Shown one piece after another: positions 4,221 to 58,215 of a stretch of 64,000 bases of DNA. Made by a program: the position numbers and the translations under genes. Within the stretch, counting starts at the first letter, position 1, and each line of letters starts with the position of its first letter. The notes below the pieces were generated by a model that saw only the letters and a list, made by a program, of their open reading frames with translations, was not told where the DNA came from and ran no database searches. This DNA comes from Macrostomum lignano. Lineage: Eukaryota. The stretch lies in contig NIVC01000718.1 in NCBI GenBank assembly GCA_002269645.1, forward strand, positions 7,662 to 71,661, written 5' to 3'.

Positions 4221-4260
4221 CGCTCTCACATTCTCTGTCAATCTGTCATTCTCTCAATCT

Positions 4261-14230: not shown

Positions 14231-14579
14231 ATGTAAATACAATACTATCATCCTATCCAAATGAAGCATCCTGTCAATGTCTGTCTGTCTGTTGCCAACA
14301 TTGCTATTTTTCTCACAATCATTATATAAGGCTTATTCAAAACAATATGTGCTCATGTATGCTACACAATGCCTTCATTTGGTTGTTGATTACGTAATCG
14401 ATTGTCCCTAAAAAGTTGGCTATTATTATTAGTTCAAAGGCAGAACACGTTTCAATTCAGACACTTGAATTTAAGAGAAAACCTAAAGAGCCTGTCAAAA
14501 GAATAAGCTTACGACCTACTACTTCTGAAGAAAGAGTTTTCCTATGACCTGTGGTATTTATCTATCTCCAACGTGTCCC

Positions 14580-16070
14580 TCTCCACCCTCTCTCTTCTGT
14601 CTCCCTCTCTCTCCTGTCTCCCTCTGTCTTCTGTCTCCCTCTCTCCCCTGTCTCCCTCTGTCTTCTGTCTCCCTCTCTCCCCTGTCTCCCTCTCTCCCCT
14701 GTCTCCCTCTCTCTTCTGTCTCCCTCTCTCCCCTGTCTCCCTCTGTCTTCTGTCTCCCTCTCTCCCCTGTCTCCCTCTGTCTTCTGTCTCCCTCTCTCCC
14801 CTGTCTCCCTCTCTCTTCTGTCTCCCTCTCTCCCCTGTCTCCCTCTCTCTTCTGTATCCATCTCTACCCTGTCTCCCTCTGTCTTCTGTCTCCCTCTCTC
14901 CCCTGTCTCCCTCTGTCTTCTGTCTCCCTCTCTCCCCTGTCTCCCTCTCTCTTCTGTCTCCCTCTCTCCCCTGTCTCCCTCTCTCTTCTGTCTCCCTCTC
15001 TCCCCTGTTTCCCTCTCTCCCCTGTCTCCCTCTCTCTTCTGTCTCCATCTCTCCCCTGTCTCCCTCTCTCTTCTGTATCCATCTCTACCCTGTCTCCCTC
15101 TCTCTTCTGTCTCCCTCTCTCCCCGAGTCCCCTGTCTCCCTCTGTCTTCTGTCTCCCTCTCTCCCCTGTCTCCCTCTGTCTTCTGTATCCATCTCTACCC
15201 TGTCTCCCTCTGTCTTCTGTCTCCCTCTCTCCCCTGTCTCCCTCTGTCTTCTGTCTCCCTCTCTCCCCTGTCTCCCTCTGTCTTCTGTCTCCCTCTCTCC
15301 CCTGTCTCCCTCTGTCTTCTGTCTCCCTCTCTCCCCTGTCTCCCTCTCTCTTCTGTCTCCCTTTCTCCCCTGTCTCCCTCTGTCTTCTGTCTCCCTCTCT
15401 TCCCTGTCTCCCTCTCTCCCCTGTCTCCCTCTCTCTTCTGTCTCCCTCTCTCTTCTGTCTCCATCTCTACCCTCTCTCCCTCTCTCTCCCCTGTCTCCCT
15501 CTCTCCCCTGTCTCCCTCTCTCCCCTGTCTCCCTCTGTCTTCTGTCTCCCTCTCTCCCCTGTCTCCCTCTGTCTTCTGTCTCCCTCTCTCCCCTGTCTCC
15601 CTCTGTCTTCTGTCTCCCTCTCTCCCCTGTCTCCCTCTCTCTTCTGTCTCCCTTTCTCCCCTGTCTCCCTCTGTCTTCTGTCTCCCTCTCTCCCCTGTCT
15701 CCCTCTCTCTTCTGTCTCCCTCTCTCCCCTGTCTCCCTCTCTCTTCTGTCTCCATCTCTACCCTCTCTCCCTCTCTCTCCCCTGTCTCCCTCTCTCCCCT
15801 GTCTCCCTCTCTCCCCTGTCTCCCTCTCTCTTCTGTCTCCCTCTCTCTTCTGTCTCCCTCTCTCTTCTGTATCCACCTCTCTTCTGTCTCCATCTCTACC
15901 CTGTCTCCCTCTCTACCCTGTCTCCCTCTCTTCTGTCTCCATCTCTACCCTGTCTCCCTCTCTACCCTGTCTCCCTCTCTACCCTGTCTCCCTCTCTCCC
16001 CTGTCTACCTCTCTCGCCTGTCTCCCTCTCTTCCCTGTCTCCCTCTCCTCTCTCCTCTCTCTCCCTCTCT
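14580..16070. repeat. 17-bp CT-rich minisatellite (CTGTCTCCCTCTCTCCC / CTGTCTCCCTCTGTCTT)
   Basis: Tandem units visible; all ORFs here are artefacts. Confidence 0.95.
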
Positions 16071-16183
16071 GCATCTCTGACTCTACATTTCTAATAATAG
16101 TGTCTGTTGCGTTGTCAATAACTGTCAAAGCAAGCTATGGTAAACTATAAAATTTATTTTACCATGCTTTTTAACCCTTGCAG

Positions 16184-28248: not shown

Positions 28249-29214
28249 TCAGCAATAGGTAAGGTTGGCACCAGGTGACACATCCATGGAGTTGTTCAAT
28301 TGGCTCTGCATTATGCACAGCCGGCGCCAGTGGACTGGCAGGTACTGGTCCTGATAGGACCTGGCAACAGCTGCAGCTGACAGAACCAGCAGCAGGCAGA
28401 ACCAGATCAGGCCCTGGCGGATCAGCACCGGCCGGAGAGGCCCCAGCTTCGGTGGCCGGCCCGGGTCGAACTCGATGGCGCTGTCGTAGGGCCCAGAATA
28501 GACGCGAGACTCGCGACGGATGCGACGCGGCCTGGGCGGCAGGATGGCTTGCTCAGAGTCCACTGCGGGCTGCTCATCGGCAATCAGCGGCGACCTGGCC
28601 GACAGAGTCGAGTTGGCCCTCTGCCCGGTGATTCGACCGGCCGCTGCGCGGACCTCCTTGTGCCAGTTGGTGCGCCAGATGATCAGCCAGAACACGAAGG
28701 TCTCGCCTGTTAAACCGATGAGAAGGCCGACCCAGAAGCCGCTGATCTGCATCGGGGTGAGCAGACTCAGCGGAATGCCGATGGGCAGGGCCACCAGGTA
28801 GTACGCGACAATGTTGACAATCGCACCAATCAGCTGACGGCCGCTGCCCTTCAGCACACCGGATGCCGTGGCGGACAAGCCGTCGGCGTACGCGAACGGG
28901 GCGTAGACGGTGAGGATCTCTCCGGTGGCCTCCAGAACCATCGGGTCGCTTGTAAACAGGCTGGCAACTTGCTTCTGGCAGGTGGCGAACACGATGCACA
29001 GTATCGTTGACGTAGTCAGAATCATGGTGACTGCCACTCTGTACGTGTGCTTCGCTTTCTCCACCTGTCTGGCCCCGATGTGCTGCCCGACGCGGATGTT
29101 CACGGAGATTGACATGCCCAGGGAGACCATGTAGGATAGAACGCCGCACTGGAAGAGAATGCCCTGAGAGGCCAGTTGCAATGTGCTGATGCTGCCAGCG
29201 ATGAAGGTGCCGAC
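28249..29214 (-). CDS. SLC47A: MATE multidrug and toxin extrusion transporter, exon 3 (C-terminal half including a 13th TM helix)
   Basis: CCCTCAG acceptor in phase 0; VGTFIAGSISTLQLASQGILFQ, SISVNIRVGQHIGA, SGVLKGSGRQLIGAIVNIVAYYLVALP and WRTNW are MATE motifs; TGA at 28249-51. Confidence 0.93.
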   Translation of the reverse strand, partial: VGTFIAGSISTLQLASQGILFQCGVLSYMVSLGMSISVNIRVGQHIGARQVEKAKHTYRVAVTMILTTSTILCIVFATCQKQVASLFTSDPMVLEATGEILTVYAPFAYADGLSATASGVLKGSGRQLIGAIVNIVAYYLVALPIGIPLSLLTPMQISGFWVGLLIGLTGETFVFWLIIWRTNWHKEVRAAAGRITGQRANSTLSARSPLIADEQPAVDSEQAILPPRPRRIRRESRVYSGPYDSAIEFDPGRPPKLGPLRPVLIRQGLIWFCLLLVLSAAAVARSYQDQYLPVHWRRLCIMQSQLNNSMDVSPGANLTYC

Positions 29215-30317
29215 CTGAGGGAGAAAAATTGAAGCACATGTACATTTAGATACCATAGTATAGTGTGGATCATACAATACATGCAAACGTGTGCCCTCGG
29301 GTTACGCTCGTACTACACTATCGGTAAAGGAATCAGCAACATGCCCCCCGAACTTACTCTCGAACTCACCCAATTATTAATTATTAAATGATTAATTTTT
29401 AATTTATAATTATAAATGTGGAAACCGCCTATGTGGAAACACTAGTCAATGCACTTTTCTGCAGTCGGGATGCAGATGATGCAGAAGGATATACCATTGT
29501 CAAACACAACCGGCGAGAGGCATTACTGCCCATTCCGCCGACTCCCCTGAGCAGGCACACAATCGCGCGGATACGTACGCAGTCATACGCACAGGCACAC
29601 ACTCACACAGGAGTGTACAGCGGCCCGAACTTTATTTATCGTTAGGAATGTACACTTCACTGTGCCTTGGGGGTTGGGCCACGAGAACGTTTATTGCACG
29701 AGCAGAGCCAAGCCGAGATTCCATTTTAGCCCCAAATCATTGCCAGACCACGAAGACTACGACGCCCGGCCATACATGTACACGTATGTCTTTAATGCGA
29801 GATTCAGTGTGCATGAATCACGAGCATGCAAAAGTTCTGTCAACTTGCCGCCGCCGTGACATCCTGATCACCAGCTGATCACCAGCAGGCATTCAGAACC
29901 CCCAGTCGCAACTGGATTCAGATGTATTCTGGCATTCGGGCACCCTTGCTGAACTTTTCGAAGTCTTTACAAAGTCTCAGACATGCTCGGAGGGGTTCTG
30001 GAGACATATCTGGAACGATGTAGTGCAGTGTTGTTCGTCTTGAAGAACACAGTTCTGTGCAGGCTGCCCAAGGTTGCCGTAGCAAATTTAACAGGAATTG
30101 CTGCTGTAACAGCTCTGCGAATTACTTATTTACCTACTTGTAGTAATGTAGTTGCTAAATGTAGTAGTATGTAGCTTGCATACTCAATGGTGATTGTACA
30201 ACGAGGACCCAAACAATCAGATTTCGATCTTTGTTTGACAAAGTTTAGAAACTTTCTGAGTTGCAACACATCACAAATGACGTCCTAAAAGACTCTCGGG
30301 GGTTTGCGCAGGCTCAC

Positions 30318-31228
30318 CTCATAACAGAATTCCTCCAAAGCAACCAGCAAGAGTCCCGGCACCGCCAGCCGAACAAATCCTTTAATATCGTAGAGAGCCT
30401 CCAGGGTCCAGCCGTCCCAGGTTTCCTTATAGACTCCCGACACGCGGATGTAGATGATGAGGCTGGCGCACATCACCATCAAGGACGCAGCCTGGCAGGC
30501 AGCCGACGCCTCGTACTGATAGCCCAGCACGTAGATAGCCACGTACTGGGACATCGCGTTGACCAAGTTGCCGATGAAAGCGCAGATGAGCGGCGGAGTC
30601 ACCCGGTTCTGGGTCTGCATGTACCGGGCCAGCACTAGGAATGTGTAGTCAAAGAACACGCCCGGCATGAAGATCAGGATGTAGTGCGAGGCCATATCGC
30701 TGACCACTGGGTCCTGGCCTAACAGTAGCAACAGCGGTTTCATGTGCAGGTGCAGGCAGTACACAGGAACCAGGAACATGTACATAACGATCAGACTGCG
30801 TTGCAGGTAGATACCGACTCGTTTTTTGTAGGCGCTGCCGTAGGTCTGGGCGAAGTAGGTGTCGCAGCCGGTTGACAGGCCCAGGCCGATTCCCATGCCA
30901 GCCACGTTGATGAGAGTGCAGGCTAGAGCGGCAGCATCCAGCTGCTCCTTGGACAGGTGGCCGCACATGATCACGCTGATTGTCTGCAGGAACACCTGGA
31001 AGAAGCAGGTAAGAAATGCTGGCAAATGCAGTTTGGAAAGTGCGCGAAATTCTTTCCAGTAGCCCAGTGGGAAGAATCTCTGGCCGAATCTTGTTGGCAA
31101 CGACAGTAGCCCGCCGCGAGCCGGCTGCGAGCCCGGCCACGAATGACGTGTAGCACCGCTGCGGGGAAATTTTTGGGCGTGTTTTATGTCAGCGTTTTGT
31201 TGACTGACGAACAGGTGTGGCGCGCTCT
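30318..31228 (-). CDS. SLC47A: MATE transporter exon 2
   Basis: EFRAL, MCGHLSKEQLDAAALA, GLSTGCDTYFAQTYGS, GIYLQRS and EEFCYEV; AATCAG acceptor in phase 1 and GTGAGC donor in phase 0; 2 nt plus 303 codons. Confidence 0.93.
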
Positions 31229-33989: not shown

Positions 33990-34465
33990 CCTCTCCACCG
34001 ACTCCCGCTCCATCTCTCTGTATCTACCGCTTCCTCTCTCGCTCTCCCCCTCTCTCCTCTCTCTCTCCCCCTCTCTCCTCTTGCTCTCCTTCTCTCCCTG
34101 CCTCTCTCTCTCCCCCTCTCTCCTCTTGCTCTCCTTCTCTCCCTGCCTCTCTCTCCCCCTCTCTCCTCTTGCTCTCCTTCTCTCCCTGCCTCTCTCTCTC
34201 CCCCTCTCCCCTCTTGCTCTCCTTCTCTCCCTGCCTCTCTCTCTGCCTCTTCTTCTCTCTCTGTCTCTCTCTCCTTCCTTCCCCCCTCTCCCTCCTTCTC
34301 TCCCTCTCCTCCCTCTCACTCTCCCTCTCTCCCCCTCTCACTCTCCCTCTCCTCCCTTTCTCCCTTTCCCTGCTTCACTCCAACTCTCACTTCCTCTTTC
34401 CCTCTCTCTCTTTCCCTTTCTCCCTCTCTCCGTCTCTCCCTCTTAGTCTCCTCTTTTTCTCCTCA
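33990..34465. repeat. CT-rich low-complexity tract
   Basis: Visible directly. Confidence 0.9.
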
Positions 34466-35264: not shown

Positions 35265-36170
35265 AGTCATGATGATTATTGTCACTCTATCCAGTGACTC
35301 ATGATGATTAGTGTCACTCTATCTAGTGACTCATGATGATTATTGTCACTCTATCTAGTGACTCATGATGATTGTTGTCACTCTATCTAGTGACTCATGA
35401 TGATTATTGTCACTCTATCTAGTGACTCATGATGATTATTGTCTGTCTCTATCTAGTGACTCATGATGATTATTGTCACTCTATCCAGTGACTCATGATG
35501 ATTATTGTCTGTCTCTATCCAGTGACTCATGATGATTATTGTCACTCTATCTAGTGACTCATTCTGATTATTGTCTGTCTTTATCTGGTGATTCATGATG
35601 ATTATTGTCTGTCTCTATCCAGTGACTCATGATGATTATTGTCTGTCTCTATCCAGTGACTCATGATGATTGTTGTCACTCTATCTAGTGACTCATGATG
35701 ATTATTGTCACTCTATCCAGTGACTCATGATGATTATTGTCTGTCTCTATCTAGTGACTCATGATGATTATTGTCACTCTATCTAGTGACTCATTCTGAT
35801 TATTGTCTGTCTTTATCTGGTGATTCATGATGATTATTGTCTGTCTCTATCCAGTGACTCATGATGATTATTGTCTGTCTCTATCCAGTGACTCATGATG
35901 ATTATTGCCTGTCTCTATCTAGAGACTCATGATGATTGTTGTCACTCTATCTAGTGACTCATGATGATTATTGTCACTCTATCCAGTGACTCATGATGAT
36001 TATTGTCACTCTATCTAGTGACTCATTCTGATTATTGTCTGTCTTTATCTGGTGATTCATGATGATTATTGTCTGTCTCTATCCAGTGACTCATGATGAT
36101 TGTTGTCACTCTATCTAGTGACTCATGATGATTATTGTCTGTCTCTCTGTCTAGTGACTCATAATGAATA
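35265..36170. repeat. 32-bp minisatellite TAGTGACTCATGATGATTATTGTCACTCTATC
   Basis: About 28 units with AGTGAC/GTCACT inverted hexamers. Confidence 0.95.
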
Positions 36171-36759
36171 TTGTCTGCCTATATTGAGTTGTTATGATTG
36201 CTGACTCATTGTCGCTAACAATGATTAATGCCTCTCTATATCTACATTTAGTACCGTAATCCGAGCGTAAGTAGACATGAGTCATTCCAGATGTACACAT
36301 TTCCCGATTATTTTAGACTAATTCACGTTTCTATTGTAGATCAGCTTTGGAGCAGCAAGTGTGGCTGCAGACTAGGTTTAGAAATAGTTTAGTTATTCAG
36401 CCAAAGGGACGAGCTTAGCGCAGGGCTGACAGTCAGCCAATGAGGCGAGCTCTGCAACTGGTCGAGTGCTTCTGCCCCCGGATACAACTAGCAGGAACCG
36501 GTGTCCACTGCTGCCGCCGCTGCTACAGTCCACTGATTCCCAATCAGTGCCTCATTTGCTCATATTGGAATCAAATTCAATCGTAACTTTATATCTGAGA
36601 AGTATTTTTGTCTCTATCTTGACGGAGTTATTCCGACTATTGACGATCAACTAGGCAAGTGAGTTGTGAAAAATTCTTTTATTGACAACGTATTACTTTA
36701 TTTGTTTTATCATACTCATTTGGCTTAATTTTGCGTCTCTGTTGATGACTGATTTCTGC

Positions 36760-37160
36760 GTCTTGTCTGACAAATTTCGGGATATTTTCTGATACATTTT
36801 TGGCGCTTCTTCTGACACACTTTTAGCATCTTTTCTGACAAATTTTTGGCGCTTCTTCTGACACACTTTTGGCGCTTCTTCTGATACACTTTTGACGCTT
36901 CTTCTGACACACTTTTAGCGCTTCTTCTGACACACTTTTGACGCTTCTCCTGACAAACTTTTGGCGCTTCTTCTGACACACTTTTGACGCTTCTCCTGAC
37001 AATTTTGGCGCTTCTTCTGACCCATTGTGGCACATTTTCTGACACATTTTTGGCACCTCTCTGAGACTTTTTGATGCATAATTTGACATCGTGTCCCCTG
37101 GCCACTCTCGATCTTCTGACACTTTTTCGGCCACTTTGGCGAGTTTTTCTGACAATTTTG
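36760..37160. repeat. Degenerate ~24-bp repeat TTTTGGCGCTTCTTCTGACACACT
   Basis: Visible directly. Confidence 0.85.
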
Positions 37161-38749: not shown

Positions 38750-39300
38750 CCTTCCTGTGTCTCTCCCTTCTCTCCCTGCCTCTCATCTTCCCTCTCTCCC
38801 TGCCTCTCATCTTCCCTCTCTCCCTGCCTCTCATCTTCCCTCTCTCCCTGCCTCCCATCTTCCCTCTCTCCCTGCCTCTCATCTTCCCTTATCTCCCTGC
38901 CTCTCATCTTCCCTCTCACGCTGCCTCTCATCTTCCCTCTCACGCTGCCTCTCATCTTCCCTCTCACCCTGCCTCTCATCTTCTCTCTCACCCTGCCTCT
39001 CATCTTTCCTTCTCTCCCTGCCTCTCATATTGCCTCTCACCCTGCCTCTCATCTTCCTTCTCACTCTGCTTCTCATCTTCCCTCTCACCCTGCCTCTCAT
39101 CTTCTCTCTCACCCTGCCTCTCATCTTTCCTTCTCTCCCTGCCTCTCATATTGCCTCTCACCCTGCCTCTCATCTTCCTTCTCACTCTGCTTCTCATCTT
39201 CCCTCTCACCCTGCCTCTCATCTTCCCTCTCACCCTGCCTCTCATCTTCCCTCTCACCCTGCCTCTCCACCTCCTTCGCACCCTGGACGTCAGCTTCCTT
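38750..39300. repeat. 24-bp CT-rich minisatellite CTCTCATCTTCCCTCTCACCCTGC
   Basis: Visible directly. Confidence 0.9.
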
Positions 39301-39680
39301 CTCACTCTCCTTGTCACCCCCTTGTCAAACTCCTTGCTATCTTCCCTTTCACCCTCCTTCTCACCCTCCTACTCACCCTCCCACTCACCCTCAAGCTCAC
39401 CCTTCCAGTCACCCTCCCAGTCACCCTTATATTAACGCTAAGCCTCTCCCAATCTCAAGCTGTATGCTTCGTCCATAAAAAGCACAGAAGCAATCAAATC
39501 TTATCAACTCCATCCCAAAATTGTTTCTATCGCACAATTTTTTCTGTTGAAGCTTTGAGAACATTTCTTAGAAATCAATTTTATGACTTGACTTGACTTA
39601 GCTGCAGGGCTGTCCCGGAGGGGACACAGCGGGAAGGCGCGGGCGCCCATTCCGCTAGTCCCTGAACGGCCGACGCGTCG

Positions 39681-42600
39681 CTATGGACGGAGGGTTGGCG
39701 CCGCCCAGGGAGGTCCCCCAGTGTCGCCAGCAGCTATGGTGCTCTCTGGAAAGGAGAGTTCAGCCCTGCGGGTGGCCCGAAGGTAGCGCATGAGCTGATT
39801 AAAGTTTTCGGGTTTGCACGCTTCAGTAATAGATGTGTGTGGCCCGAGGTAAGTGAGTCTGGCCCGCGTGAAGGCGGGACAGATGCTGACGAAATGCTCA
39901 GCGGTTTCGTCACCTGAGTTGCAGAAACTACAGGTGGCGTTGGTGGCGTTGCCCTGCAGGTACTGGTGCCTGGAGAAGCAGCCGTGACCAGAGAGGGTCA
40001 TGGTGGCAGCCCGGATGTCTCTGCGCGAGAGGCGCAAGAGGAGCTTCCGGAGCTGGTGAGAGGGCTGAGGGACAGCGCCTCTGGATTGCCTGCAGTTCGT
40101 GCGGTTCGCCCAAGTCGAGCGGTGCTGAGTCCTGATCCACGCTTTGATGCGCGAGTCGATGACACAGCCAGGAATCGGGACAAGAGGTTCGGGGCCGAGA
40201 GAGGAGCCGGAGGCACCAACTTTTGCAAGGGTGTCAGCCAACTCATTTCCTCGGATCCCCACATGCCCCGGAACCCACTTAAGGGTAATTTTGTTGGCGG
40301 AACCCAACACATTGAGGAGTTTGATACAGTCAAGGACTGTAGCAGAGTTGGTGCTGCAGCCACTGATGGCGTGCAAGGCAGCTTGGCTGTCCGAATGGAA
40401 AATGATGTTCTTACCAGTAACGCCAGTGGCGAGAAGCTCTGCAGTGCAGGAGCTGATGGCCAGAACTTCATTTTGGAAAACACTGGAGTTGACCCCAGTG
40501 TATTGAGCGTGGGTAGCGATGACCCTCCCGTTCAGAAAGATTCCAACACCAAAGCCGGTGTTGGCTGACTGCTTAGAACCGTCGGTGTAGCAATGAAGCT
40601 CACCAGGGTTCCAATGGTCATTGATGTTATCGCGCGAGTCGATAGCTACGGAGTAGCGCTGTCTCAGGTTGAGCGTTGAGGCAATGCCATCGGTGAAGAC
40701 GCGATTGGCCTGACACTCGTTGAGAAAGTTGAGGCACAGATCGCTATGCGGGACAAGGTTCCGCTTAGCAGGTGCTCTCATGTAAATGAATTTGACGCCG
40801 GCATCAATTAGACGCCGCGTCGTTCTAGCCGCCTCACCCCTGATGAAGAGGTCAAGAGGCGGAAGATTAAGAAAGGCCCCCATGCCAGCAAAGGGCGTGG
40901 ACCTGGTGGCGTTGCAGATGAGCCTACACGCTCTGCCTTGGATCGTGTTGAGCAGGTCTGCATGGCTTTTGACCTGGGTAGCGCTAACCCAGACAACAGA
41001 GGCGTACGTAATGGCAGGTCTAACTACGGAAGTATAGATCCACCAAAGCCGCTTTGGGGATAGACCCCAAGAAGTGCCAAGTGCTCGTCGGAGCTGGGCC
41101 AGGATGGCTGAGGCACGCTTAGCTTTTGCTTTCACGTGGAAGGACCAGTTGAGCCGGTGGTCAAGTGTGACCCCGAGACATCTGGTCTGGTGCGCGAAGG
41201 CAATATCTCTGCCGTAGAGCTGCAGAGGACGTATGTTCCAGCGTAGTCTGCTGGTAAACATAATGGCAACGGTTTTGGGCTCAGAGAGTTCCAAACCATT
41301 GTCATTGGCCCAGGATTCTGCTTTGCGGATAAAGCTCTGCATCAGATCCCTGAGCGTGCTGGGAGACGGTCCTGCCACAATGGCCGTGACGTCATCAGCA
41401 TACCCGACTTTGAAGACGGGGTCAGGTCGGGAGTCACTCAGAAGAGCGTCCATGACCAGGTTCCAGAGCGTCGGGGTGAGGACTCCGCCTTGGGGTCCAC
41501 CCTTACAGACTCTGGTGGAGGCAGTTTGCCCAAGAAGTTGGGCAGTGACCGTACGGTTGGAGATCATGTACATGATCCACCGTATGAGGGTAGCATGAGC
41601 TTTGCGATTTTGAAGGGCCCTCTGAAACGCTTCAAAGATAACGTTGTCGAAGGCGCCAACAATGTCAAGAAAGAGAGCCAGGGCGTAACCGTCACCCAGT
41701 ACCGCCCGTTCAATCTTTTCGACAATCGCATGCAGGGCGCTGTCAGTCGACCTCCCGGTACGGAAGGCGTGCTGATTATTGCTGAGGGGCATCGCTGTCA
41801 GCTCGCAGGAGAGCAGCCGCCAGAGAATAAGCCTCTCAGTGAGCTTAAGCATTGCTGACGTTAAGCTAATTGGCCGGAAGGCCTTGACGCTTTGGTAGTC
41901 ACCCTTCCCAGGTTTGGGAATAAAGACTACTCGAGCTTCAGTCCAGCTTTTGGGAACGTATCCCAGCTGGATAGAGGCCCGCATAAGATTGCGGGTGAGT
42001 CTCAGGAACGAGGGTATCTTGGCTGCTTCACGAAGGAGAACAGGGTAGATACCATCAGGTCCAGGAGATTTGAAGGGTTTGAAGGTTCTGACCGCACGAG
42101 CGATTAGGTCTTCAGTGACAATGCCCGCCGCTAGGGTGGCTCCATCCATCGAATGGTTGGGCTCCGGTCTAGCAGTAGGTACCCTCGGGAAGAATGTGCT
42201 AAGCATATGCTGAAGCACTTCTTCAGGGTCTTTAGTAAGAGAGCCATCATCTTTTTTATCATGGCTAATTTGGACATTTTGTCCATTGTAAGGGCCTTGA
42301 CAAGCCTAGAAGTAGGTCTGTCTTGATCCAATTCATTGCAGAATTGGCGCCACTTACATTCCTTGGCCTTGCGCACTTCAGATTTGAAATTGCGGGAGGC
42401 TTGCCGGAAAAGCTCCATGTCCTCCGGGTTTCCGGTCTTCATGGCACGGCGATGAAGGCTTTTGGCCTTCCGCCTGAGTTTCCCCAGCTCCGGGTTCCAC
42501 CACGGCGCCGAGGTCTTGCCTCTGTAGGCGCGAGCAGGACAAGCCGCTTCGTAGGCTGCAATAATGCAACCTGTCAGCGTCTCAGCCATATGATCCACAT

Positions 42601-43419
42601 CCTCGCAGGTCTCAATCGGACGTAAGTCCGTGAGTTCCTGCAGGTGCAGATCAAGGGCAGCCTTGTAGGCCGCCCAATCAGTGTTGCGGATATTGCGTCT
42701 CCAAGTGATCGGAGACTGGGTTTTAGTGTCCGCGATATTAAAGGCGATAAAGCAGTGGTCAGACAGGGAGGGCTCCTCAGACCAGACTCTCCACTCCTTG
42801 ACTCTGTCAAAGAGTCTTGGGGTAACGAGTGTGGCGTCGAGGACCTCGGTCCATCTGCCATTATTAAAGGTAGGAGTGCTGCCGCGGTTGCAGAGCATGA
42901 GGTTTGTGTTAGAGATGAGGGCCAGAAGCTCCTCTCCTCTAGTGTTGGTATCTTTGCTGCCCCAGTGCTTGTGGTGCGCGTTGAGGTCGCCCCCTAAGCA
43001 CAGCTCAGCGTTCTGGGACTCGCAGTACTGCGCAAGGCGCAGTAAACTCTCGGGAGCAGGGTCTCTGTCGCCTGGGATATAAACCGAGGCAACAAGACAC
43101 GTACGCGGAGAGAAATGATTAGATTGGATGACGCAAAGGTCTCCATCAGAGAGATCAGTCCTCAGCCAAGCCTGGAGATGGCTAGCAGCGAGGATAGCCG
43201 CTCTAGGGCGGCTGTTCCCCGGGCCACACACATAAAAATCAAGTAGCCAGAGGGAATGTTGGGCAACTTACCGTTGCGCATCCAGGGTTCCTGGATCAGG
43301 ATGAGGCCTGGCCTGTACAGCTCAGCAATCTTCATCAGATTTACTGACGCAGATACGCAATGCTGTAAATTTATTTGCAGACAGAATGTCGCTCCTTTGG
43401 CAGCGTGGAGCTTAGTCAT
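39681..43419 (-). CDS. Retrotransposon ORF2 (endonuclease, reverse transcriptase, RNase H, CCHC), 1245 aa after repair of two frameshifts
   Basis: APE motifs QINLQH, IQEPW, GDLNAHH and SDH; RT motifs KSPGPDGI, FRPISL, FLDIVGAFD, GPQGGVLTP and YADD; RNase H motifs YTDGSK, SDSQAAL and WVPGHVGIRGNELAD; zinc knuckle CSFC...H...C. Shifts at the (TG)n run 43225-33 and the A6 run 42252-57. Confidence 0.95.
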
Positions 43420-43458: not shown

Positions 43459-44964
43459 TCAAGGAGACTTGGACAACAGATCGTCCTCGTCCCAGGCCGC
43501 TGGGGCTTGACTGGGAGATGGGAGTTGGTCGACGTCCATGGCCTCCTCACCCCCACCGGCCCCCCCAGCAGAGTCCTCAGGCTCCGATGACAGGATGGAG
43601 GAAGCTTCCTCACCTGCATCTTTACCTTCAGACCCCACCAAGGTGGCCGAGGAGAGCTCGGATTCCGAAGACCCGGCCTCGTCCTCAACTCCTTCTCCGA
43701 CTGGCAGGTTTGGTTCCCGGGGCTCGGCCGGAGCCGTTACCGCGGTCGCCGAACTGCTGCTAGCAGAGGGGCGAGATGCAGCTTTGGCTTTGGGATCGGC
43801 TTGCGCCTTTCCTTGGGCCTTAGACTGCGCCCCGCTCTTGCCGGAGATGCCGGGGTTGGCAGTAGCCTTCCCTTTGGCAGACTTTCCTCGGCGCAACTTG
43901 AGCTTGAGGGCACCCAGCTGGAAAGAGGATCCATTAGGGTACCGACTCGCCCAAGTGCTGGAAAGGCCGAGGACAATTGAGTTGCCCGTCTCCCCCCTGC
44001 GGACTTTGCGGTGATACACCAGTCCACTAGCAGGGAGGTCGGGGTTCAGACGCAGTAGGACCCGGCGAATAACGTCTGGTCCAGCTGCGGTGCTCTTAGC
44101 AGGGACGAAAACCACATAGGGTATCGTCTTTGGACGCTGGCCCTCGCGAAGAAAAAGAGCTCCACCAAGGTCAGCATCCAAGGAGACCGTCGGTAGCCGC
44201 TGGAGCAGCCGCCGAGCGTCCTCCTCGCTGCTAGGAGCAATAAGAACGAATGTGCTTCGCAGCACCATCCGCTCAACGCCGATGGAGATTCCCTCCTCGA
44301 CAGTCAGCTCAATCAGATAGGAGTCAACAGCACTCCACACTTTTTGAAGCTGATCAGTGGTCCAGTCCTGGTCGCGACCTTGGATGATCACTCCCGGGAT
44401 TTTGGCCTTGGCCTTCGCCGCAAAGGTAGCTCCCGAAGGAACCTCCTTGTTGGCAGTGGCCATTTGTTGCGCCGTGGTTTCGGCCTCAGCAGCCGCGGCA
44501 GCAGCTCCAGGGAGCGCCGCCGCTGAACTACTGGAGCTTCCACCGGCCGGCCCGCCTGGTTGCCTTGGGACTCCAGTCGCTTCAGCATCCATGGTGGACG
44601 CCGCCGCTTTGGCCCCCGCAGCTCCCTTCTTGGCCTGCCTTTTGGCGCGTTGTTTAGCGCGTTTGCGCTCAAGCCGAGCCCGCTGAGCTTCATCGGATCT
44701 GCCAGATTTGGCCGGTCCTTTAGGCTCAGAGCTCGCGGTTCCCTTAGATCCACCAGCGGAGCTGGCAGGTCTTAGGGTATTTTGAGTTTGGTAGCTCTGG
44801 TCGGATCTGCCAGCAGAGCCAGCCGGTCCTTCCTTTGCCACAGTTGAATCAGTCGGTTGGGATCTGCCAGCAGGGCCGGCCGGTCCTTCGGACTGAGGTT
44901 GGGGTTTAGAAGGGTCCCCGTCCCTAGAAATAGCTTGTTTATCCATAGTCGGCTCGAAGGCCAT
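43459..44964 (-). CDS. Retrotransposon ORF1 (501 aa from the first ATG; basic helix plus DUF4780-like region)
   Basis: Intact ORF ending 40 bp before ORF2; open frame extends to 45021. Confidence 0.85.
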   Translation of the reverse strand: MAFEPTMDKQAISRDGDPSKPQPQSEGPAGPAGRSQPTDSTVAKEGPAGSAGRSDQSYQTQNTLRPASSAGGSKGTASSEPKGPAKSGRSDEAQRARLERKRAKQRAKRQAKKGAAGAKAAASTMDAEATGVPRQPGGPAGGSSSSSAAALPGAAAAAAEAETTAQQMATANKEVPSGATFAAKAKAKIPGVIIQGRDQDWTTDQLQKVWSAVDSYLIELTVEEGISIGVERMVLRSTFVLIAPSSEEDARRLLQRLPTVSLDADLGGALFLREGQRPKTIPYVVFVPAKSTAAGPDVIRRVLLRLNPDLPASGLVYHRKVRRGETGNSIVLGLSSTWASRYPNGSSFQLGALKLKLRRGKSAKGKATANPGISGKSGAQSKAQGKAQADPKAKAASRPSASSSSATAVTAPAEPREPNLPVGEGVEDEAGSSESELSSATLVGSEGKDAGEEASSILSSEPEDSAGGAGGGEEAMDVDQLPSPSQAPAAWDEDDLLSKSP

Positions 44965-45242
44965 GATAAAAGGTTGGTGGGCTACCCTCAAAGGGGCGCG
45001 GTACCCACCCGGCCGCTCCACCTGACCGGGCAGTAGGCCAATAGCACCCTCAAGGCTGGCCCGACACCAGGAGGGGGACCGCTTGCGACCGGACTACTCC
45101 CCGGCCTTCCAGCCCATCGGCACGGTCAACACCTTAGGCATTAGAGAGTACGTTGAGCAGTACCACGGCCTGCAGGTTGGCGAGCCAGACCCGCATACCC
45201 AAATTCGGCCGAAGCCACTGGATAGGGTCGCCAGCGCCGGAG

Positions 45243-45480
45243 CCCAGTCTGTCCAGCAGCCCTAGGGACTGCCTTGAACACACGCGGGGACGAGTACCCT
45301 GGGTCGACTTGCGAGACAGCGTGGGGGGGGGTCTGCGGCTGCCAGAGGCAAATAGAGGGTGCAGACCTCCCACCAGCCTTGACCTGCTGAAGATAGGGGC
45401 AGGCGTGAAGCATCGCAGACCTTAGCCCATGGGCCTAGTCTGTCTCATACTTCACTGGCATGCTGAATACGCCTTCGCGT
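45243..45480 (-). ncRNA. Candidate HDV-like self-cleaving ribozyme at the retrotransposon 5' end
   Basis: Hand-folded: P1 ACGCG/CGCGU, P3 GGG/CCC, L3 UACUCGU, P1.1 AC/GU, P4 hairpin, C at 45251 then AGA, P2 CCCA(G)/(C)UGGG; predicted cleavage site 1 nt from the TSD boundary. Confidence 0.6.
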
Positions 45481-46224
45481 GCAATTTTATGACACTATTA
45501 TATTACATTACTTCGGCGCATTAAACTATCCCAATGTCCAGGTTGGCATGTCTTCTGTGTGCAATTCTAGGGGAAATGAAAATTGAATGGGAGCTCTGCA
45601 GTTTGCGCTGGTAAACAGCAAAAGTGCGAAAGAGAAGAGAGATGGAAAGAAAGAAAGAAAGAAAGAAAGAAGGTTGCAGGAGGCGGCTCAAGAATCGGAC
45701 TTGGTAGACGCGGGAGGCCAAGTGATGGACTACTTATTCTGTTTGATTCGCGGCAAGATAAGCTGCCTGGGATTAATTCGAGTGAAGGCACAGGCTCCCC
45801 CGCCCTGGGTTGCCTCGCTCACACGCAGACACCAAAACAACCCAGCAACTCACTTTACGTATTTGGCTCCGTAGCTACAACGTATATGAAATTTAGCAAA
45901 GCTGCTAATATATTGCTTTTAGTTTTGTTAGTCTGACATGCGATTCGAAAACAGGAGGTAAAGAGGGACAAGGGCGAACCCAGGAAAACATGTTGCTTTT
46001 CTATTTTCAACATTCTTCCTTTAGAGATGATTAATTAAGCTGGGATTTTCTCCAACTGGGGTTGGAGGGGGGAGGGCGGATGCAAACGGAGCGACGGACT
46101 GCACTTTTACTGTTGACTGAATGAGTTTTCACGGGCACGTACCCGTTAGCTCCGGTATACGAATATTTAATAAGGTATAGACAATAACAAGGCCTCCGAA
46201 AATCTGAAAATCTTGTAGGTTCCC

Positions 46225-51427: not shown

Positions 51428-51893
51428 CAATACAATAATATATGGCTGCAAGCCTAATCCTTCCCAGTCAATCCACCATACAATTGATTTAACTTGTTCC
51501 TTAATTCCTTTTTTAGCCCCAAGAAGTAGATAGGAAATGGGAAGACTCCCAAAAAGTTGGCAGTCTGCCCTGGCAGACCCGCAGATCAATGGTCGCATGA
51601 ATCAATATATTTTCGTGAGGCCGCAAACACAATGAGGTCAGAAATTTCTGTAGCGCTTTAGTAATCGTAAAAAAAGATTTGTAAATCTGACTACAATTTT
51701 GCCGTACAACACGTGGGCATTATTGTGTAATTAATTGGATCCCAACCACAAGTGTCACCTAAATTCTAAGTGGCGTGTTTTCCAACAGCCGTTAATAATT
51801 CTTGTTTATTTGAGCTCTCCTTCAGCTACGAGCGGAGTTAGTGGATCTTTTCACATGTAGTGGGTAGTGTGTTTTTTTGGCTGCAGTTTAAAC

Positions 51894-52796
51894 CAGGGGC
51901 GTCACCACGGGGGGGACATGTACTCCCCAGTAAAAGCTATGGGGGACATGCCAATGCTTTGTCGACCTCCCCACACTCCAACTTGTGACCCGGTATAAAA
52001 ATAAATAATTTTGATTCAGGGCGCCAAAATGAGTGCCTGCGGCGCTAAAATGAGTGCCTGCGGAGCTAAAATGAGTGTCTGTGGTGCTAAAATGAGTGCC
52101 TGCGGCGTTAAAATGAGTGCCTGCGGCGCTAAAATGAGTGCCTGCGGAGCCAAAATGAGTGCCTGCGGCGCTAAAATGAGTGCCTGCGGCGCTAAAATGA
52201 GTGCCTGCGGAGCCAAAATGAGTGCCTGCAGTGCTAAAATGAGTGCCTGTGGCGCTAAAATGAGTGCCTGCAGTGCTAAAATGAGTGCCTGCGGCGCTAA
52301 AATGAGTGCCTGCGGAGCCAAAATGAGTGCCTGCAGTGCTAAAATGAGTGCCTGTGGCGCTAAAATGAGTGCCTGCAGTGCTAAAATGAGTGCCTCCGAC
52401 GCTAAAATGAGTGCCTGCGGTGCTAAAATGAGTGCCTGCGCTGCTAAAATGAGTGCCTGCGGCGCTAAAATGAGTGCCTGCGGCGCTAAAATGAGTGCCT
52501 GCGGCGCTAAAATGAGTGCCTCCGACGCTAAAATGAGTGCCTGCGGTGCTAAAATGAGTGCCTGCGGCGCTAAAATGAGTGCCTGCGGCGCTAAAATGAG
52601 TGCCTGCGGCGCTAAAATGAGTGCCTGCGACGCTAAAATGAATGCCTGCGGCGCCAAAATGAATGCCTTCGCTAAATAAGAGCTGATAACACGGATTCTG
52701 AAAATAATGTACATGTAGGAATTTATTCATGTATGTACATGTCGAATTCTTGGCTTCCCCCTTCCCTCACCATGAAAACCATAGCGAGCCCCCATG
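51894..52796 (-). mobile_element. hAT-like MITE carrying ~31 copies of a 21-bp repeat
   Basis: CAGGGGCGTCACC terminus, imperfect opposite terminus GCCCCCATG, 8-bp flanks GTTTAAAC and GTTTAAAT; unique arms match the 56330 copy in reverse. Confidence 0.8.
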
Positions 52797-56206: not shown

Positions 56207-56329
56207 AAATTCCCACTTGGGTATATATTGGCTATATACATGTATATTATATGGGACCATGAAAGTTACGCCACTTGTGAAGCACGCCGAATTTAGAAAT
56301 TAAATTTCTGCTGTCATGTCGGTCACCAG

Positions 56330-58215
56330 CAGGGGCGTCGTAATGGATTTTATGACAGGGGGACAAAGCCAAGAATTCTACATGTACATGTACATTATTA
56401 ACAGAATCGCTATTGTCAGCGCTCATTTTAGCGCCGCAGGCACTCATTTTAGCGCCGCAGGCACTCATTTTAGCTTTGCAGGCACTCATTTTAGCGCCGC
56501 AGGCACTCATTTTAGCGCCGCAGGCACTCATTTTAGCGCCACAGGCACTCATTTTAGCGCCGCAAGCACTCATTTTAGCGCCGCAGGCACTCATTTTAGC
56601 ACCGCAGACACTCATTTTAGCGCCACAGGCACTCATTTTAGCACTGCAGGCACTCATGTTAGCGCCGCAGGCACTCATTTTAGCGCCGCAGGCACTCATT
56701 TTAGCACCGCAGACACTCATTTTAGCGCCACAGGCACTCATTTTAGCACTGCAGGCACTCATGTTAGCGCCGCAGGCACTCATTTTAGCACTGCAGGCAC
56801 TCATTTTAGCACTGCAGGCACTCATTTTAGCACTGCAGGCACTCATTTTAGCACTGCAGGCACTCATTTTAGCGCCGCAGGCACTCATTTTAGCGCCGCA
56901 GGCAATCATTTTAGCGCCACAGGCACTCATTTTAGCGCCGCAGGCAATCATTTTAGCGCCGCAGGCACTCATTTTAGCGCCGCAGGCACTCATTTTAGCG
57001 CCGCAGGCACTCATTTTAGCGCCACAGGCACTCATTTTAGCGTCGGAGGCACTCATTTTAGCGCCACAGGCACTCATTCTAGCGCCGCAGGCACTCATTT
57101 TAGCGCCACAGGCACTCATTTTAGCGTCGGAGGCACTCATTTTAGCGCCGCAGGCACTCATTTTAGCGCCACAGGCACTCATTTTAGCGTCGGAGGCACT
57201 CATTTTAGCGCCACAGGCACTCATTTTAGCGCCGCAGGCACTCATTTTAGCGCCACAGGCACTCATTTTAGCGTCGGAGGCACTCATTTTAGCGCCGCAG
57301 GCACTCATTTTAGCGCCACAGGCACTCATTTTAGCGCTGCAGGCAATCATTTTAGCGCCGCAGGCACTCATTTTAGCGCCACAGGCACTCATTTTAGCGC
57401 TGCAGGCAATCATTTTAGCGCCGCAGGCACTCATTTCAGCACCGCAGACACTCATTTTAGCGCCACAGGCGCTCATTTTAGCGCCACAGGCACTCATTTT
57501 AGCGTCGGAGGCACTCATTTTAGCGCCGCAGGCACTCATTTTAGCGCCACAGGCACTCATTTTAGCGTCGGAGGCACTCATTTTAGCGCCACAGGCACTC
57601 ATTTTAGCGCCACAGGCACTCATTTTAGCGCCGCAAGCACTCATTTTAGCGCCGCAGGCACTCATTTTAGCACCGCAGACACTCATTTTAGCGCCACAGG
57701 CACTCATTTCAGCACCGCAGGCACTCATTTCAGCACCGCAGACACTCATTTTAGCGCCACAGGCACTCATTTTAGCGTCGGAGGCACTCATTTTAGCGCC
57801 GCAGGCACTCATTTTAGCGCCACAGGCACTCATTTTAGCGTCGGAGGCACTCATTTTAGCGCCACAGGCACTCATTTTAGCGCCGCAGGCACTCATTTTA
57901 GCGCCACAGGCACTCATTTTAGCGTCGGAGGCACTCATTTTAGCGCCGCAGGCACTCATTTTGGCGCCACAGGCACTCATTTTAGCGCTGCAGGCAATCA
58001 TTTTAGCGCCGCAGGCACTCGTTTTAGCGCCACAGGCACTCATTTCAGCACCGCAGACACTCATTTTAGCGCCACAGGCGCTATATTATGTCGTCCTGAA
58101 GCAAAATTATTGATTTCTTATACCGGGTCACAAGGTGGGGTGGGGGACAAAGCATTGGCGTGTCCCCCATAGCTTTTACTGGGTCCCCCCTGTCCCCCCG
58201 GTGGTGAAGCCCCTG
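56330..58215 (+). mobile_element. hAT-like MITE carrying ~79 copies of the 21-bp repeat GGCACTCATTTTAGCGCCGCA
   Basis: CAGGGGCGTC and GAAGCCCCTG termini (9/10 match); arms shared with the 51894 copy; no clear TSD. Confidence 0.8.

What the first reader, a model, noticed from the sequence alone, without database searches (positions are those of the whole stretch)
45243..45481. Candidate HDV-like self-cleaving ribozyme whose predicted cut site coincides with the retrotransposon 5' end
On the element strand the first bases ACGCG (45480-45476) pair with CGCGU (45286-45282) as P1. That strand is preceded by GGG-UACUCGU-CCC (P3/L3; compare HDV UCCUCGC and CPEB3 UUCACGU) and followed by GU, which can pair with L3 AC as a P1.1 with an A-U in place of the usual C-G. 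Next come a P4 hairpin (UUCA/UGGA enclosing GCAGUCC/GGGCUGC), a C at 45251 plus AGA, and CUGGG pairing with CCCAG as P2. J1/2 is a ~170-nt structured insert (GAGACAG/CUGUCUC, GGUCUGC/GCAGACC). The TSD independently places the element start 1 nt from the predicted cleavage site. HDV-like ribozymes are established for R2, RTE and LOA/Baggins elements, but this large variant with A at +1 looks unusual. Caveats: P1 is only 5 bp, and P2 and P3 compete for one G; a fourth G in the run at 45297-99 would make the fold canonical and would fit the window's homopolymer-deletion pattern.
Basis: partly seen in the sequence, partly recalled or inferred. Interest (0 to 1): 0.85.

Follow-up and report, generated by a model that had tools for sequence, protein, structure and literature searches.

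The report
HDV-like ribozyme heading a flatworm retrotransposon
The first ~247 bases of a full-length LINE-type retrotransposon of the flatworm Macrostomum lignano fold into a hepatitis-delta-virus-like self-cleaving ribozyme whose predicted cut falls on the element's first base; this is a new example of a known trick, not a new kind of RNA.

Summary
The identification as an HDV-like ribozyme is supported, but with a better register. P1 is 7 bp, GCACGCG (45482-45476) with CGCGUGU (45286-45280). It starts with G and a G.U wobble, at the boundary set by the target-site duplication. So the supposedly unusual features (A at +1, 5-bp P1, a missing fourth G) are not needed. A strict descriptor finds this as the only hit with P1 of 6 bp or more in 128 kb of window strands; shuffles give 0.13 hits with a 7-bp P1 per strand.

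The key evidence is one relative, L001, with 59% ORF2 and 34% ORF1 amino-acid identity. Its contig begins exactly with a P1 strand and has the same fold. Of 19 core pairs, 12 are unchanged, 2 changed on one side, 5 changed on both sides (two of these in the P1.1 pseudoknot), and none is broken. The 172-nt J1/2 insert is a conserved three-hairpin domain.

Large J1/2 domains and 5'-terminal HDV-like ribozymes are already known in R2, Baggins, RTE and L1Tc. Rfam models do not match, catalysis is untested, and only two sequences were available. Verdict: new member of a known kind, moderate interest.

The parts
45482..45493 (-). 5' copy of the target-site duplication, GTCATAAAATTG. At least 8-9 bp (ATAAAATT(G)). 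The last G (45482) may instead be the element's first base.
   Evidence: the identical 12-mer recurs at 39587-39576
45476..45482 (-). P1 5' strand, GCACGCG. The predicted cleavage is 5' of G45482.
   Evidence: 7 bp with 45286-45280, G45482.U45280 wobble, -10.4 kcal/mol
45309..45475 (-). J1/2 peripheral domain: closing stems plus three hairpins (H1 45455-45405, H2 45404-45382, H3 45375-45322).
   Evidence: same architecture when W and L001 are folded separately; 7 pairs changed on both sides in the RNAalifold consensus
45410..45450 (-). Most conserved block of the element (inside hairpin H1): 88% identical to L001 nt 33-73, at the same offset from nt 1.
   Evidence: blastn
45305..45308 (-). P2 extension (P2a) 5' strand, GUCG, separated from P2 by A45304.
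   Evidence: pairs with CGGC 45239-45236. L001 has GCCG 165-168 with CGGC 241-244 and the same 1x3 internal loop.
45300..45303 (-). P2 5' strand, CCCA.
   Evidence: pairs with UGGG 45246-45243
45297..45299 (-). P3 5' strand, GGG.
45290..45296 (-). L3, UACUCGU. It has U at position 1 and G at position 6, as in HDV UCCUCGC. A45295 and C45294 form P1.1.
45287..45289 (-). P3 3' strand, CCC.
45280..45286 (-). P1 3' strand, CGCGUGU, directly abutting P3'.
45278..45279 (-). P1.1 3' strand, GU (G45279-C45294, U45278-A45295).
   Evidence: both pairs changed on both sides in L001 (A195-U181, G196-C180)
45274..45277 (-). J1.1/4, UCAA. L001 has GCAA; HDV has GCAA (from memory).
45255..45273 (-). P4 hairpin: GGCAGUCC, loop CUA, GGGCUGCU.
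   Evidence: L001 has an unrelated 11-bp hairpin at the same place.
45247..45254 (-). J4/2, GGACAGAC, with the candidate catalytic C45251.
   Evidence: L001 has GCUGC, with C228.
45243..45246 (-). P2 3' strand, UGGG.
45236..45239 (-). P2 extension (P2a) 3' strand, CGGC; this is the 3' edge of the ribozyme.
43459..44964 (-). ORF1 (501 aa from the first ATG). No Pfam domain. 98% identical to parts of UniRef M. lignano gene models.
39681..43383 (-). ORF2: AP endonuclease, reverse transcriptase, RNase H. Broken by at least two frameshifts, near 43205 and between 42272 and 42191, where there is an A-run.
39585..39680 (-). 3' UTR ending in an (AAGTC)3 tail (39599-39585). The motif CCCTGCAGCTAAGTCAA is shared with L001.
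39576..39587 (-). 3' copy of the target-site duplication, GTCATAAAATTG. Its first GTC overlaps the tail repeat.

Best explanation
Window 45482-45236 (minus strand) encodes an HDV-like self-cleaving ribozyme. It forms the 5' terminus of a ~5.9-kb non-LTR retrotransposon of Macrostomum lignano, with ORF1 and an ORF2 carrying AP endonuclease, reverse transcriptase and RNase H.

Shown here: the sequence can adopt the nested double pseudoknot.
- P1 is 7 bp and P1.1 is 2 bp.
- P2 is 4 bp plus a 4-bp extension.
- P3 is 3 bp with a 7-nt L3, followed by the P4 hairpin and a C in J4/2.
- P1 starts at the base where the target-site duplication ends.
- A diverged relative keeps every helix through compensating changes.

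Inferred mechanism:
1. The element is transcribed as part of a longer transcript, from an upstream host or read-through promoter, or possibly from an internal promoter.
2. The 172-nt J1/2 domain folds into a closed three-hairpin module that holds P1 next to P2.
3. C45251 acts as the general acid, and the RNA cuts itself 5' of G45482.
4. This releases an element RNA whose 5'-OH end is exactly the element's first base.
5. That RNA serves as template for target-primed reverse transcription and as message for ORF1 and ORF2.
6. By analogy with R2 and L1Tc, the folded ribozyme may also help translation of the uncapped RNA.
For: 1. Anatomy. All segments are present at the stated coordinates. The strict descriptor's only hit with P1 of 6 bp or more in both strands of the window is this one. 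Shuffles give 0.13 hits with a 7-bp P1 per 64-kb strand.
2. Position. P1 begins at G45482, which is 0-1 nt from the end of the TSD.
3. Independent replicate. L001 is a Logan contig carrying an element with 59% ORF2 and 34% ORF1 amino-acid identity.
   - It begins at nt 1 with GCCUGC, which pairs with GCAGGC 189-194 directly after GGG-UCUCCGU-CCC.
   - It has P1.1, P2, P2a, P4 and a J4/2 C in the same order.
4. Covariation. Of 19 homologous core pairs, 12 are the same, 2 changed on one side, 5 changed on both sides and 0 are broken. Three extra pairs were created by matching insertions on both strands. Both P1.1 pseudoknot pairs are compensatory.
5. J1/2 domain. It folds to the same closed three-hairpin domain in both sequences, with 7 compensatory pairs.
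6. Energetics. Forcing P1 and P3 costs less than 1 kcal/mol relative to the minimum-energy fold in both sequences, before adding the pseudoknot helices.
7. Conservation. At DNA level the 5' region holds the most conserved block of the element, 88% against 65-73% in ORF2.
8. Literature.
   - 5'-terminal HDV-like ribozymes are known in R2, Baggins, RTE and L1Tc (PMC6765202, PMC3774820).
   - J1/2 ranges from 23 to more than 700 nt (PMC3774820).
   - Structured J1/2 domains activate the ribozyme (PMC4908430).
   - U:A pairs occur in P1.1 of fast ribozymes (PMC13635239).
Against: - No Rfam family, HDV-type or other, reaches the gathering score in the window.
- No HDV-type family appears even at E up to 10 in 45000-45800 or in L001 1-400.
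- Only two sequences carry the comparative argument.
- The origin of L001 (organism; DNA or RNA library) is unknown, so its contig start is not proof of an RNA 5' end.
- P2 proper is only 4 bp in the window copy (-4.1 kcal/mol). Short P2 helices have been linked to weak activity in L1Tc-clade ribozymes (PMC4035085).
- J4/2 (CAGAC in the window, CUGC in L001) differs from HDV's CGAA.
- L001 has G1-C rather than a G.U wobble.
- This copy has a frameshifted ORF2, so it may be a dead copy, or the assembly may contain errors.
- More distant relatives (30-46% identity) show no such motif at their 5' ends.
- Catalysis has not been tested.
Confidence: 0.8

Rival explanations
1. It is a conserved, structured 5' UTR with another job and no self-cleavage. 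That job could be an internal promoter read at DNA level, an IRES-like element, or a binding site for the element's own proteins. On this reading the resemblance to the HDV fold is incidental.
For: - The best-conserved piece (45450-45410, 88% identity) lies in the J1/2 insert, not in the catalytic core.
- Rfam HDV-type models do not match.
- Many non-LTR elements have internal promoters, and R2 protein binds a 5' pseudoknot (PMC6765202, PMC4035085).
- An RNA start at nt 1 of L001 would be explained equally well by transcription initiation.
Against: - A promoter or a generic structured leader does not explain compensatory changes in the 2-bp P1.1 pseudoknot inside L3.
- Nor does it explain a P1 that pairs the very first bases with the bases abutting P3' in two diverged elements.
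- Nor the retained U...CG. L3 and the J4/2 C.
- These functions are also not exclusive: L1Tc's Pr77 is both promoter and ribozyme (PMC3383444).
Confidence: 0.12
2. It is a real HDV-like ribozyme, but in the first reader's register. P1 is the 5-bp ACGCG/CGCGU, cleavage is 5' of A45480, and G45482-C45481 are target or untemplated bases.
For: - The GUGU after CGCG allows both registers with an identical P1.1.
- If the TSD is read as 9 bp, C45481 is left over, and untemplated 5' bases are common at non-LTR junctions.
- A 4-nt P1 exists in one R2 ribozyme (PMC3774820).
Against: - The 7-bp register is much more stable (-10.4 against -5.8 kcal/mol).
- It gives the canonical G.U at the cleavage site.
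- It puts N-CAA right after P1.1, as in L001.
- It makes the first bases GC, as in L001, with an ungapped alignment from nt 1 to nt 73.
- A 5-bp P1 motif occurs at chance level (0.95 per strand).
Confidence: 0.06
3. It is a chance match of a permissive motif in G+C-rich sequence.
For: - With J1/2 allowed up to 800 nt the motif is not rare: 0.13 to 0.95 hits per 64-kb strand depending on P1 length.
- There were 7 background hits in 1.1 Mb of related loci.
- A descriptor without the L3 sequence constraint is uninformative (240 hits on the plus strand against 339 on the minus strand).
Against: - None of the background hits starts at an element or contig end.
- Here it does so twice, in two elements whose P1, P1.1 and P2 sequences differ but stay complementary.
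Confidence: 0.02

Closest known systems
R2 retrotransposon 5' HDV-like ribozymes (Drosophila, Bombyx, many animals including planarian R2)
   Same: - A nested double-pseudoknot ribozyme at the 5' end of a non-LTR element that frees the element RNA from a co-transcript.
- P1 of 6-7 bp abutting P3'.
- J1/2 loops from 23 to more than 700 nt, and a variable P4 (PMC3774820).
- Proposed extra roles in translation and protein binding (PMC6765202).
   Different: - R2 is site-specific for 28S rDNA, has a single ORF with a restriction-like endonuclease, and often cuts inside the upstream 28S sequence.
- This element has two ORFs, an AP endonuclease and RNase H, inserts with a TSD in non-rDNA sequence, and is predicted to cut at its own first base.
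Baggins1 (LOA clade) and RTE element HDV-like ribozymes (Ruminski et al. 2011, cited in PMC6765202 and PMC3774820)
   Same: AP-endonuclease non-LTR elements dispersed in the genome, thought to lack their own promoter and to be cut out of host transcripts at their 5' end.
   Different: - I could not read the primary paper or obtain reference sequences.
- Clade relationship and structural details (J1/2 size, +1 base) were therefore not compared.
- This element's clade within the RNase H-bearing I/LOA-like group is undetermined.
L1Tc/ingi Pr77 ribozyme of trypanosomatids
   Same: - The element has AP endonuclease, RT and RNase H.
- The ribozyme occupies the first bases and cleaves 5' of +1.
- The same DNA also acts as an internal promoter, a possible parallel to the strongly conserved J1/2 block here (PMC3185411, PMC3383444, PMC4035085).
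   Different: L1TcRz is compact (~77 nt), has C at +1 and has no large J1/2 domain. It is in protists, not animals.
drz-Agam-2-1 and other large HDV-like ribozymes with a J1/2 peripheral domain
   Same: A stable structured domain inserted in J1/2 that brings P1 and P2 together (the 'pinch') and accelerates cleavage (PMC4908430).
   Different: - Different host (mosquito).
- The Rfam drz-Agam families gave no match here.
- The three-hairpin domain here has no sequence counterpart that I could find.
Twister-variant ribozymes of Schistosoma mansoni Perere-3 LINEs
   Same: A functional analogue in another flatworm: a 5' ribozyme in an AP-endonuclease LINE that inserts with a TSD (PMC8501958).
   Different: A different ribozyme class (twister, not HDV-like) and a different element clade.

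Membership tests
HDV-like self-cleaving ribozymes | Nested double pseudoknot with segments in the order P1, J1/2, P2, P3, L3, P3', P1', P1.1, P4, J4/2, P2' | tested here: met
   The descriptor hit is unique in the window for P1 of 6 bp or more. The same order is found in L001. Every pair was checked base by base.
HDV-like self-cleaving ribozymes | P1 of about 6-7 bp whose 3' strand directly abuts P3' (PMC3774820) | tested here: met
   Window: 7 bp, 45482-76 with 45286-80. L001: 6 bp, 1-6 with 189-194.
HDV-like self-cleaving ribozymes | G at +1 forming a G.U wobble at the cleavage site (typical of HDV and CPEB3, but not universal: the L1Tc clade has C1, PMC4035085) | tested here: inconclusive
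   Window: G45482.U45280, met. L001: G1-C194, a Watson-Crick pair.
HDV-like self-cleaving ribozymes | Two-base-pair P1.1 between L3 positions 2-3 and the two bases after P1' | tested here: met
   Window: C45294-G45279 and A45295-U45278. L001: U181-A195 and C180-G196. Both pairs changed on both sides.
HDV-like self-cleaving ribozymes | 3-bp G+C-rich P3 closing a ~7-nt L3 with U at position 1 and G at position 6 (the trans G.U pair of loop III, PMC3386971) | tested here: met
   Window: GGG/CCC with UACUCGU. L001: GGG/CCC with UCUCCGU. The comparison with HDV UCCUCGC is from memory.
HDV-like self-cleaving ribozymes | A cytosine in J4/2 that acts as the general acid (C75 in HDV) | tested here: inconclusive
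   A C is present at the right place in both (C45251; L001 C228), each followed by 3-4 nt before P2'. Its catalytic role cannot be tested here.
HDV-like self-cleaving ribozymes | P2 of at least ~5 bp stacking on P3 (R2 consensus, PMC3774820) | tested here: inconclusive
   Window: 4 bp (CCCA/UGGG), then a 1x3 internal loop, then 4 bp (GUCG/CGGC). L001: 6 bp, the same loop, then 4 bp.
HDV-like self-cleaving ribozymes | Match to a curated covariance model of the class (Rfam HDV ribozyme, CPEB3, drz-Agam and related families) | tested here: not met
   No hit at gathering score in the window. No HDV-type hit at E up to 10 in 45000-45800 or in L001 1-400. These models represent narrow subfamilies with short J1/2, and I could not test a J1/2-deleted version.
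HDV-like self-cleaving ribozymes | Site-specific Mg2+-dependent self-cleavage giving 2',3'-cyclic phosphate and 5'-OH ends | not testable with these tools
   Needs an in vitro transcription and cleavage assay, or 5'-OH end mapping.
AP-endonuclease non-LTR (LINE) retrotransposons with RNase H | ORF2 with Exo_endo_phos, RVT_1 and RNase_H domains, an upstream ORF1, a TSD, and a simple-repeat 3' tail | tested here: met
   Pfam hits. 312 homologues with the same domain set. A 9-12-bp TSD and an (AAGTC)3 tail. The clade (I, LOA, Ingi and so on) was not determined.

The most novel reading that the evidence does not exclude
The J1/2 insert may be more than a passive clamp; it could be a second functional module embedded in the ribozyme. 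Its hairpin H1 (45450-45410) is the most conserved stretch of the whole element: 88% identical between elements whose ORF1 proteins share only 34%, and at the same offset from nt 1. It could be an internal promoter read at DNA level, as in L1Tc Pr77, or a binding site for the element's own proteins, as with the R2 5' pseudoknot. That would make this a combined promoter or protein-binding site plus ribozyme in an animal LINE outside R2.
Probability: 0.3. Interest if true: 0.55.

Novelty: new member of a known kind. Interest (0 to 1): 0.4.

Why it matters
- It adds a free-living flatworm (Macrostomum, a regeneration and transgenesis model) and an RNase H-bearing two-ORF LINE lineage to the known carriers of 5'-terminal HDV-like ribozymes. 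The only flatworm LINE ribozymes I found in the searched literature are twister variants in Schistosoma and a predicted R2 ribozyme in planaria.
- It gives a natural example of a large, conserved three-hairpin J1/2 domain for testing the "pinch" model.
- It explains how this element gets a precise 5' end.
- For annotation, it marks true full-length copies. It also warns that several UniRef M. lignano gene models are chimeras of this element with host genes.

Tried and rejected
1. Rfam at gathering score on the window, and at E up to 10 on 45000-45800 and on L001 1-400: no ribozyme family.
2. A second copy of the 5' region or of the element in the window: none.
3. Exact-pattern scans of the conserved J1/2 block in metagenome and genome contigs: 0 hits.
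4. ORF1-profile protein search: 0 hits. ORF1-based locus searches in genome and viral contigs: 0 hits. Exact look-up of the window's ORF1: not on record.
5. The second-closest relative, P0004 (57% identity): DNA not available, and the contig lacks the 5' end.
6. Eighty metagenome loci plus three further contigs at 30-46% ORF2 identity:
   - The strict descriptor finds nothing at their 5' ends.
   - A relaxed descriptor without the L3 sequence constraint is uninformative, with 240 hits on the plus strand against 339 on the minus strand.
   - Rfam on 20 of them gives only a borderline 5S hit.
   So I cannot say the ribozyme is clade-wide.
7. A covariance model built from the window core alone retrieves only itself. 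It does not retrieve the L001 core even with filters off. The two cores are related by position and structure, not by sequence.
8. The organism of L001 could not be identified: singleton clusters with no names.
9. Rejected: the need for a fourth G at 45297-99, because L001 has three Gs there as well.
10. Rejected: the J1/2 helix GAGACAG/CUGUCUC, because it competes with the conserved hairpin H1 and is not conserved in L001.

Full report
**What is there.**
- On the minus strand the window carries one full-length non-LTR retrotransposon.
- ORF1 (43459-44964) has no Pfam domain. ORF2 (43383-39681) has AP-endonuclease, reverse-transcriptase and RNase H domains.
- ORF2 is interrupted by at least two frameshifts, near 43205 and between 42272 and 42191, where there is an A-run.
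- The element ends in an (AAGTC)3 tail at 39599-39585.
- It is flanked by a duplication of ATAAAATTG (45490-45482 and 39584-39576). The duplication extends to 12 bp (GTCATAAAATTG) if the GTC shared with the tail is counted.
- ORF1 is 98% identical to parts of UniRef gene models of Macrostomum lignano, and ORF2 hits several more. The window is therefore from that flatworm or a very close relative.
- There is only one copy of the element or of its 5' region in the window.

**Check of the observation.**
- I wrote a descriptor for the HDV-like fold: P2, a 3-bp Watson-Crick P3, L3 = UNNNCGN, P3', an abutting P1', a 2-bp P1.1 to L3 positions 2-3, a C followed by 2-4 nt in J4/2, and P2'. J1/2 was allowed up to 800 nt.
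- In both strands of the window, the only hit with P1 of 6 bp or more is at this locus.
- In that register P1 is GCACGCG (45482-45476) with CGCGUGU (45286-45280), 7 bp, starting with a G.U wobble. P1.1 is G45279-C45294 and U45278-A45295.
- Both registers exist because the P1' strand is followed by GUGU. The 7-bp helix is worth -10.4 kcal/mol against -5.8 for the 5-bp one.
- Block dinucleotide shuffles of the window give 0.13 full motifs per 64-kb strand with P1 of 7 bp or more, 0.41 with 6 or more, and 0.95 with 5 or more.
- The improbable part is the position. P1 begins at G45482, the base where the duplication ends. That G is either the last base of a 9-bp TSD or the first base of the element after an 8-bp TSD.

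**The relative.**
- The closest ORF2 homologue with retrievable DNA is a 6,492-nt Logan contig, L001. It has 59% ORF2 and 34% ORF1 amino-acid identity.
- At DNA level only parts of ORF2 align, at 65-73%.
- The contig begins exactly with GCCUGC. This is the reverse complement of GCAGGC at 189-194, which directly follows GGG-UCUCCGU-CCC (176-188).
- Then come AG (P1.1, pairing with U181 and C180), GCAA, an 11-bp P4 hairpin, GCUGC (J4/2), and UCUGAG pairing with CUCAGA 170-175.
- Numbered from G45482, the window and L001 align without gaps from nt 1 to nt 73. Both start with GC. This supports G45482 as the element's first base.

**Covariation.** I used the most parsimonious alignment of the two cores.
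- There are 19 homologous base pairs: 12 identical, 2 changed on one side (wobble to Watson-Crick), 5 changed on both sides with pairing kept, and none broken.
- Three further pairs arise from matching insertions on both strands: one in P1 of the window and two in P2 of L001.
- The five compensatory pairs are two in P1, one in P2, and both pairs of P1.1. P1.1 is the short pseudoknot inside L3 and is the most HDV-specific helix.
- I also found a conserved 4-bp extension of P2 beyond a 1x3 internal loop. In the window it is GUCG 45308-05 with CGGC 45239-36; in L001, GCCG 165-168 with CGGC 241-244.
- The extension answers the concern that P2 is short, and it moves the 3' edge of the structure to 45236.
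- L001, like the window, has exactly three Gs between P2 and L3, so no base need be missing from the assembly.

**The J1/2 insert.**
- The 172 nt between P1 and P2 fold on their own into a closed domain of three hairpins.
- The 163-nt insert of L001, folded separately, gives the same architecture (z-scores -2.0 and -2.2).
- RNAalifold on the pair finds 34 pairs, 7 of them compensatory.
- Hairpin H1 contains the best-conserved stretch of the whole element: 45450-45410, 88% identical to L001 33-73.
- Enforcing P1 and P3 costs less than 1 kcal/mol against the unconstrained optimum in both sequences, before the pseudoknotted P2 and P1.1 are added. In L001 the unconstrained optimum already contains P1.

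**What did not fit, or failed.**
- No Rfam family reaches threshold. No HDV-type family appears even at E up to 10, in either sequence.
- A covariance model built from the window core alone does not find the L001 core. The two cores share structure and position but little sequence outside P3 and L3.
- All attempts to obtain more members of this lineage failed.
- Eighty-three more distant elements (30-46% identity) show no such motif at their 5' ends.
- The argument therefore rests on two sequences. The nature of L001 (species; DNA or RNA library) is unknown.
- J4/2 differs from HDV's, L001 has G-C rather than G.U at +1, and the window copy may be defective.

**Most likely mechanism.**
- Shown: a conserved, covarying HDV-type double pseudoknot whose P1 starts at the element's first base.
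- Inferred, by analogy with R2, Baggins, RTE and L1Tc (PMC3774820, PMC6765202, PMC3185411): the element is transcribed within a longer RNA and the ribozyme cuts 5' of G45482. C45251 would act as the general acid, and the J1/2 domain would hold P1 and P2 together (PMC4908430).
- This yields a 5'-OH element RNA with an exact 5' end. The fold may also aid translation of the uncapped RNA.
- ORF fragments with host-type protein domains lie on the same strand. A SNAP-like ORF is upstream at 51888-52730, and MatE ORFs are downstream. Read-through transcription is therefore plausible but not shown.

**Comparison with what is known.**
- Large J1/2 inserts (23 to more than 700 nt), 6-7-bp P1 helices, variable P4, A-U pairs in P1.1 and 5'-terminal location are all documented (PMC3774820, PMC4908430, PMC13635239).
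- In flatworms, the literature I could search reports twister variants in Schistosoma LINEs (PMC8501958) and a predicted R2 ribozyme in planaria (PMC3774820).
- No paper in the library links Macrostomum with ribozymes.
- This is therefore a new member of a known kind, not an unusual variant.

**Verdict.**
- I put 0.8 on a genuine HDV-like ribozyme, in the sense of a fold under selection. My confidence that this particular copy is active is somewhat lower.
- Interest is 0.4.

Noticed in passing
window 45410-45450 (minus strand); L001 33-73: A 41-nt block inside J1/2 hairpin H1 is 88% identical between two elements whose ORF1 proteins share 34%, and it sits at the same offset from nt 1. It is the most conserved DNA of the element and could be a promoter or a protein-binding module.
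   Followed up: partly
window 39576-39599 and 45482-45493: The duplication can be read as 12 bp (GTCATAAAATTG), because its first GTC is also the end of the (AAGTC)3 tail. This is microhomology between target and tail, as expected if the nicked target anneals to the tail repeat during priming. The 3' UTR motif CCCTGCAGCTAAGTCAA is shared with L001 (5938-5955).
   Followed up: partly
window 45247 and 45299; L001 231 and 176: In both elements the last J4/2 base is a C that could pair with the first G of P3, extending P2 at the expense of P3. A rearrangement at the bottom of P2 has been described for the antigenomic HDV ribozyme (PMC2175327). Its meaning here is unknown.
   Followed up: no
window ~43205 and 42191-42272: ORF2 is broken by at least two frameshifts. 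The second region contains an A-run (GATAAAAAAGATG). They could be homopolymer errors of a long-read assembly or real decay of this copy.
   Followed up: partly
window 38764-39285, 35267-36175, 34033-34443, 36787-37054: There are large tandem arrays just 3' of the element: a 24-nt unit with about 22 copies, and a 32-nt unit with about 27 copies. Elsewhere, ORFs open in several overlapping frames (2865-4335, 14544-16150, 56247-58172) suggest similar repeats, which I did not check. The window is very repeat-rich.
   Followed up: partly
proteins P0001, P0002, P0003, P0007 (UniRef, M. lignano): These public gene models fuse this element's ORF1 or ORF2 to host domains (UBC9-type E2, GPCR, ABC transporter). 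They look like annotation chimeras caused by the retrotransposon.
   Followed up: no
window 28249-29286, 30285-31100, 51888-52730 (minus strand): ORFs with host-type protein domains lie on the same strand as the element: two MatE-domain ORFs downstream and a weak SNAP-like ORF upstream.
   Followed up: no
L049 184-315 (minus strand): A 5S rRNA match just above the gathering score (39.5 against 38 bits) lies in the 5' region of a distant relative's contig, antisense to its ORFs.
   Followed up: no
L003 1-120 and L005 2290-2410: These two metagenome contigs carry the same distant family. L003 starts exactly where L005's homology to it begins, after an A+T-rich flank, so L003's first base is probably that element's 5' end. 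No HDV-like motif was found there.
   Followed up: partly
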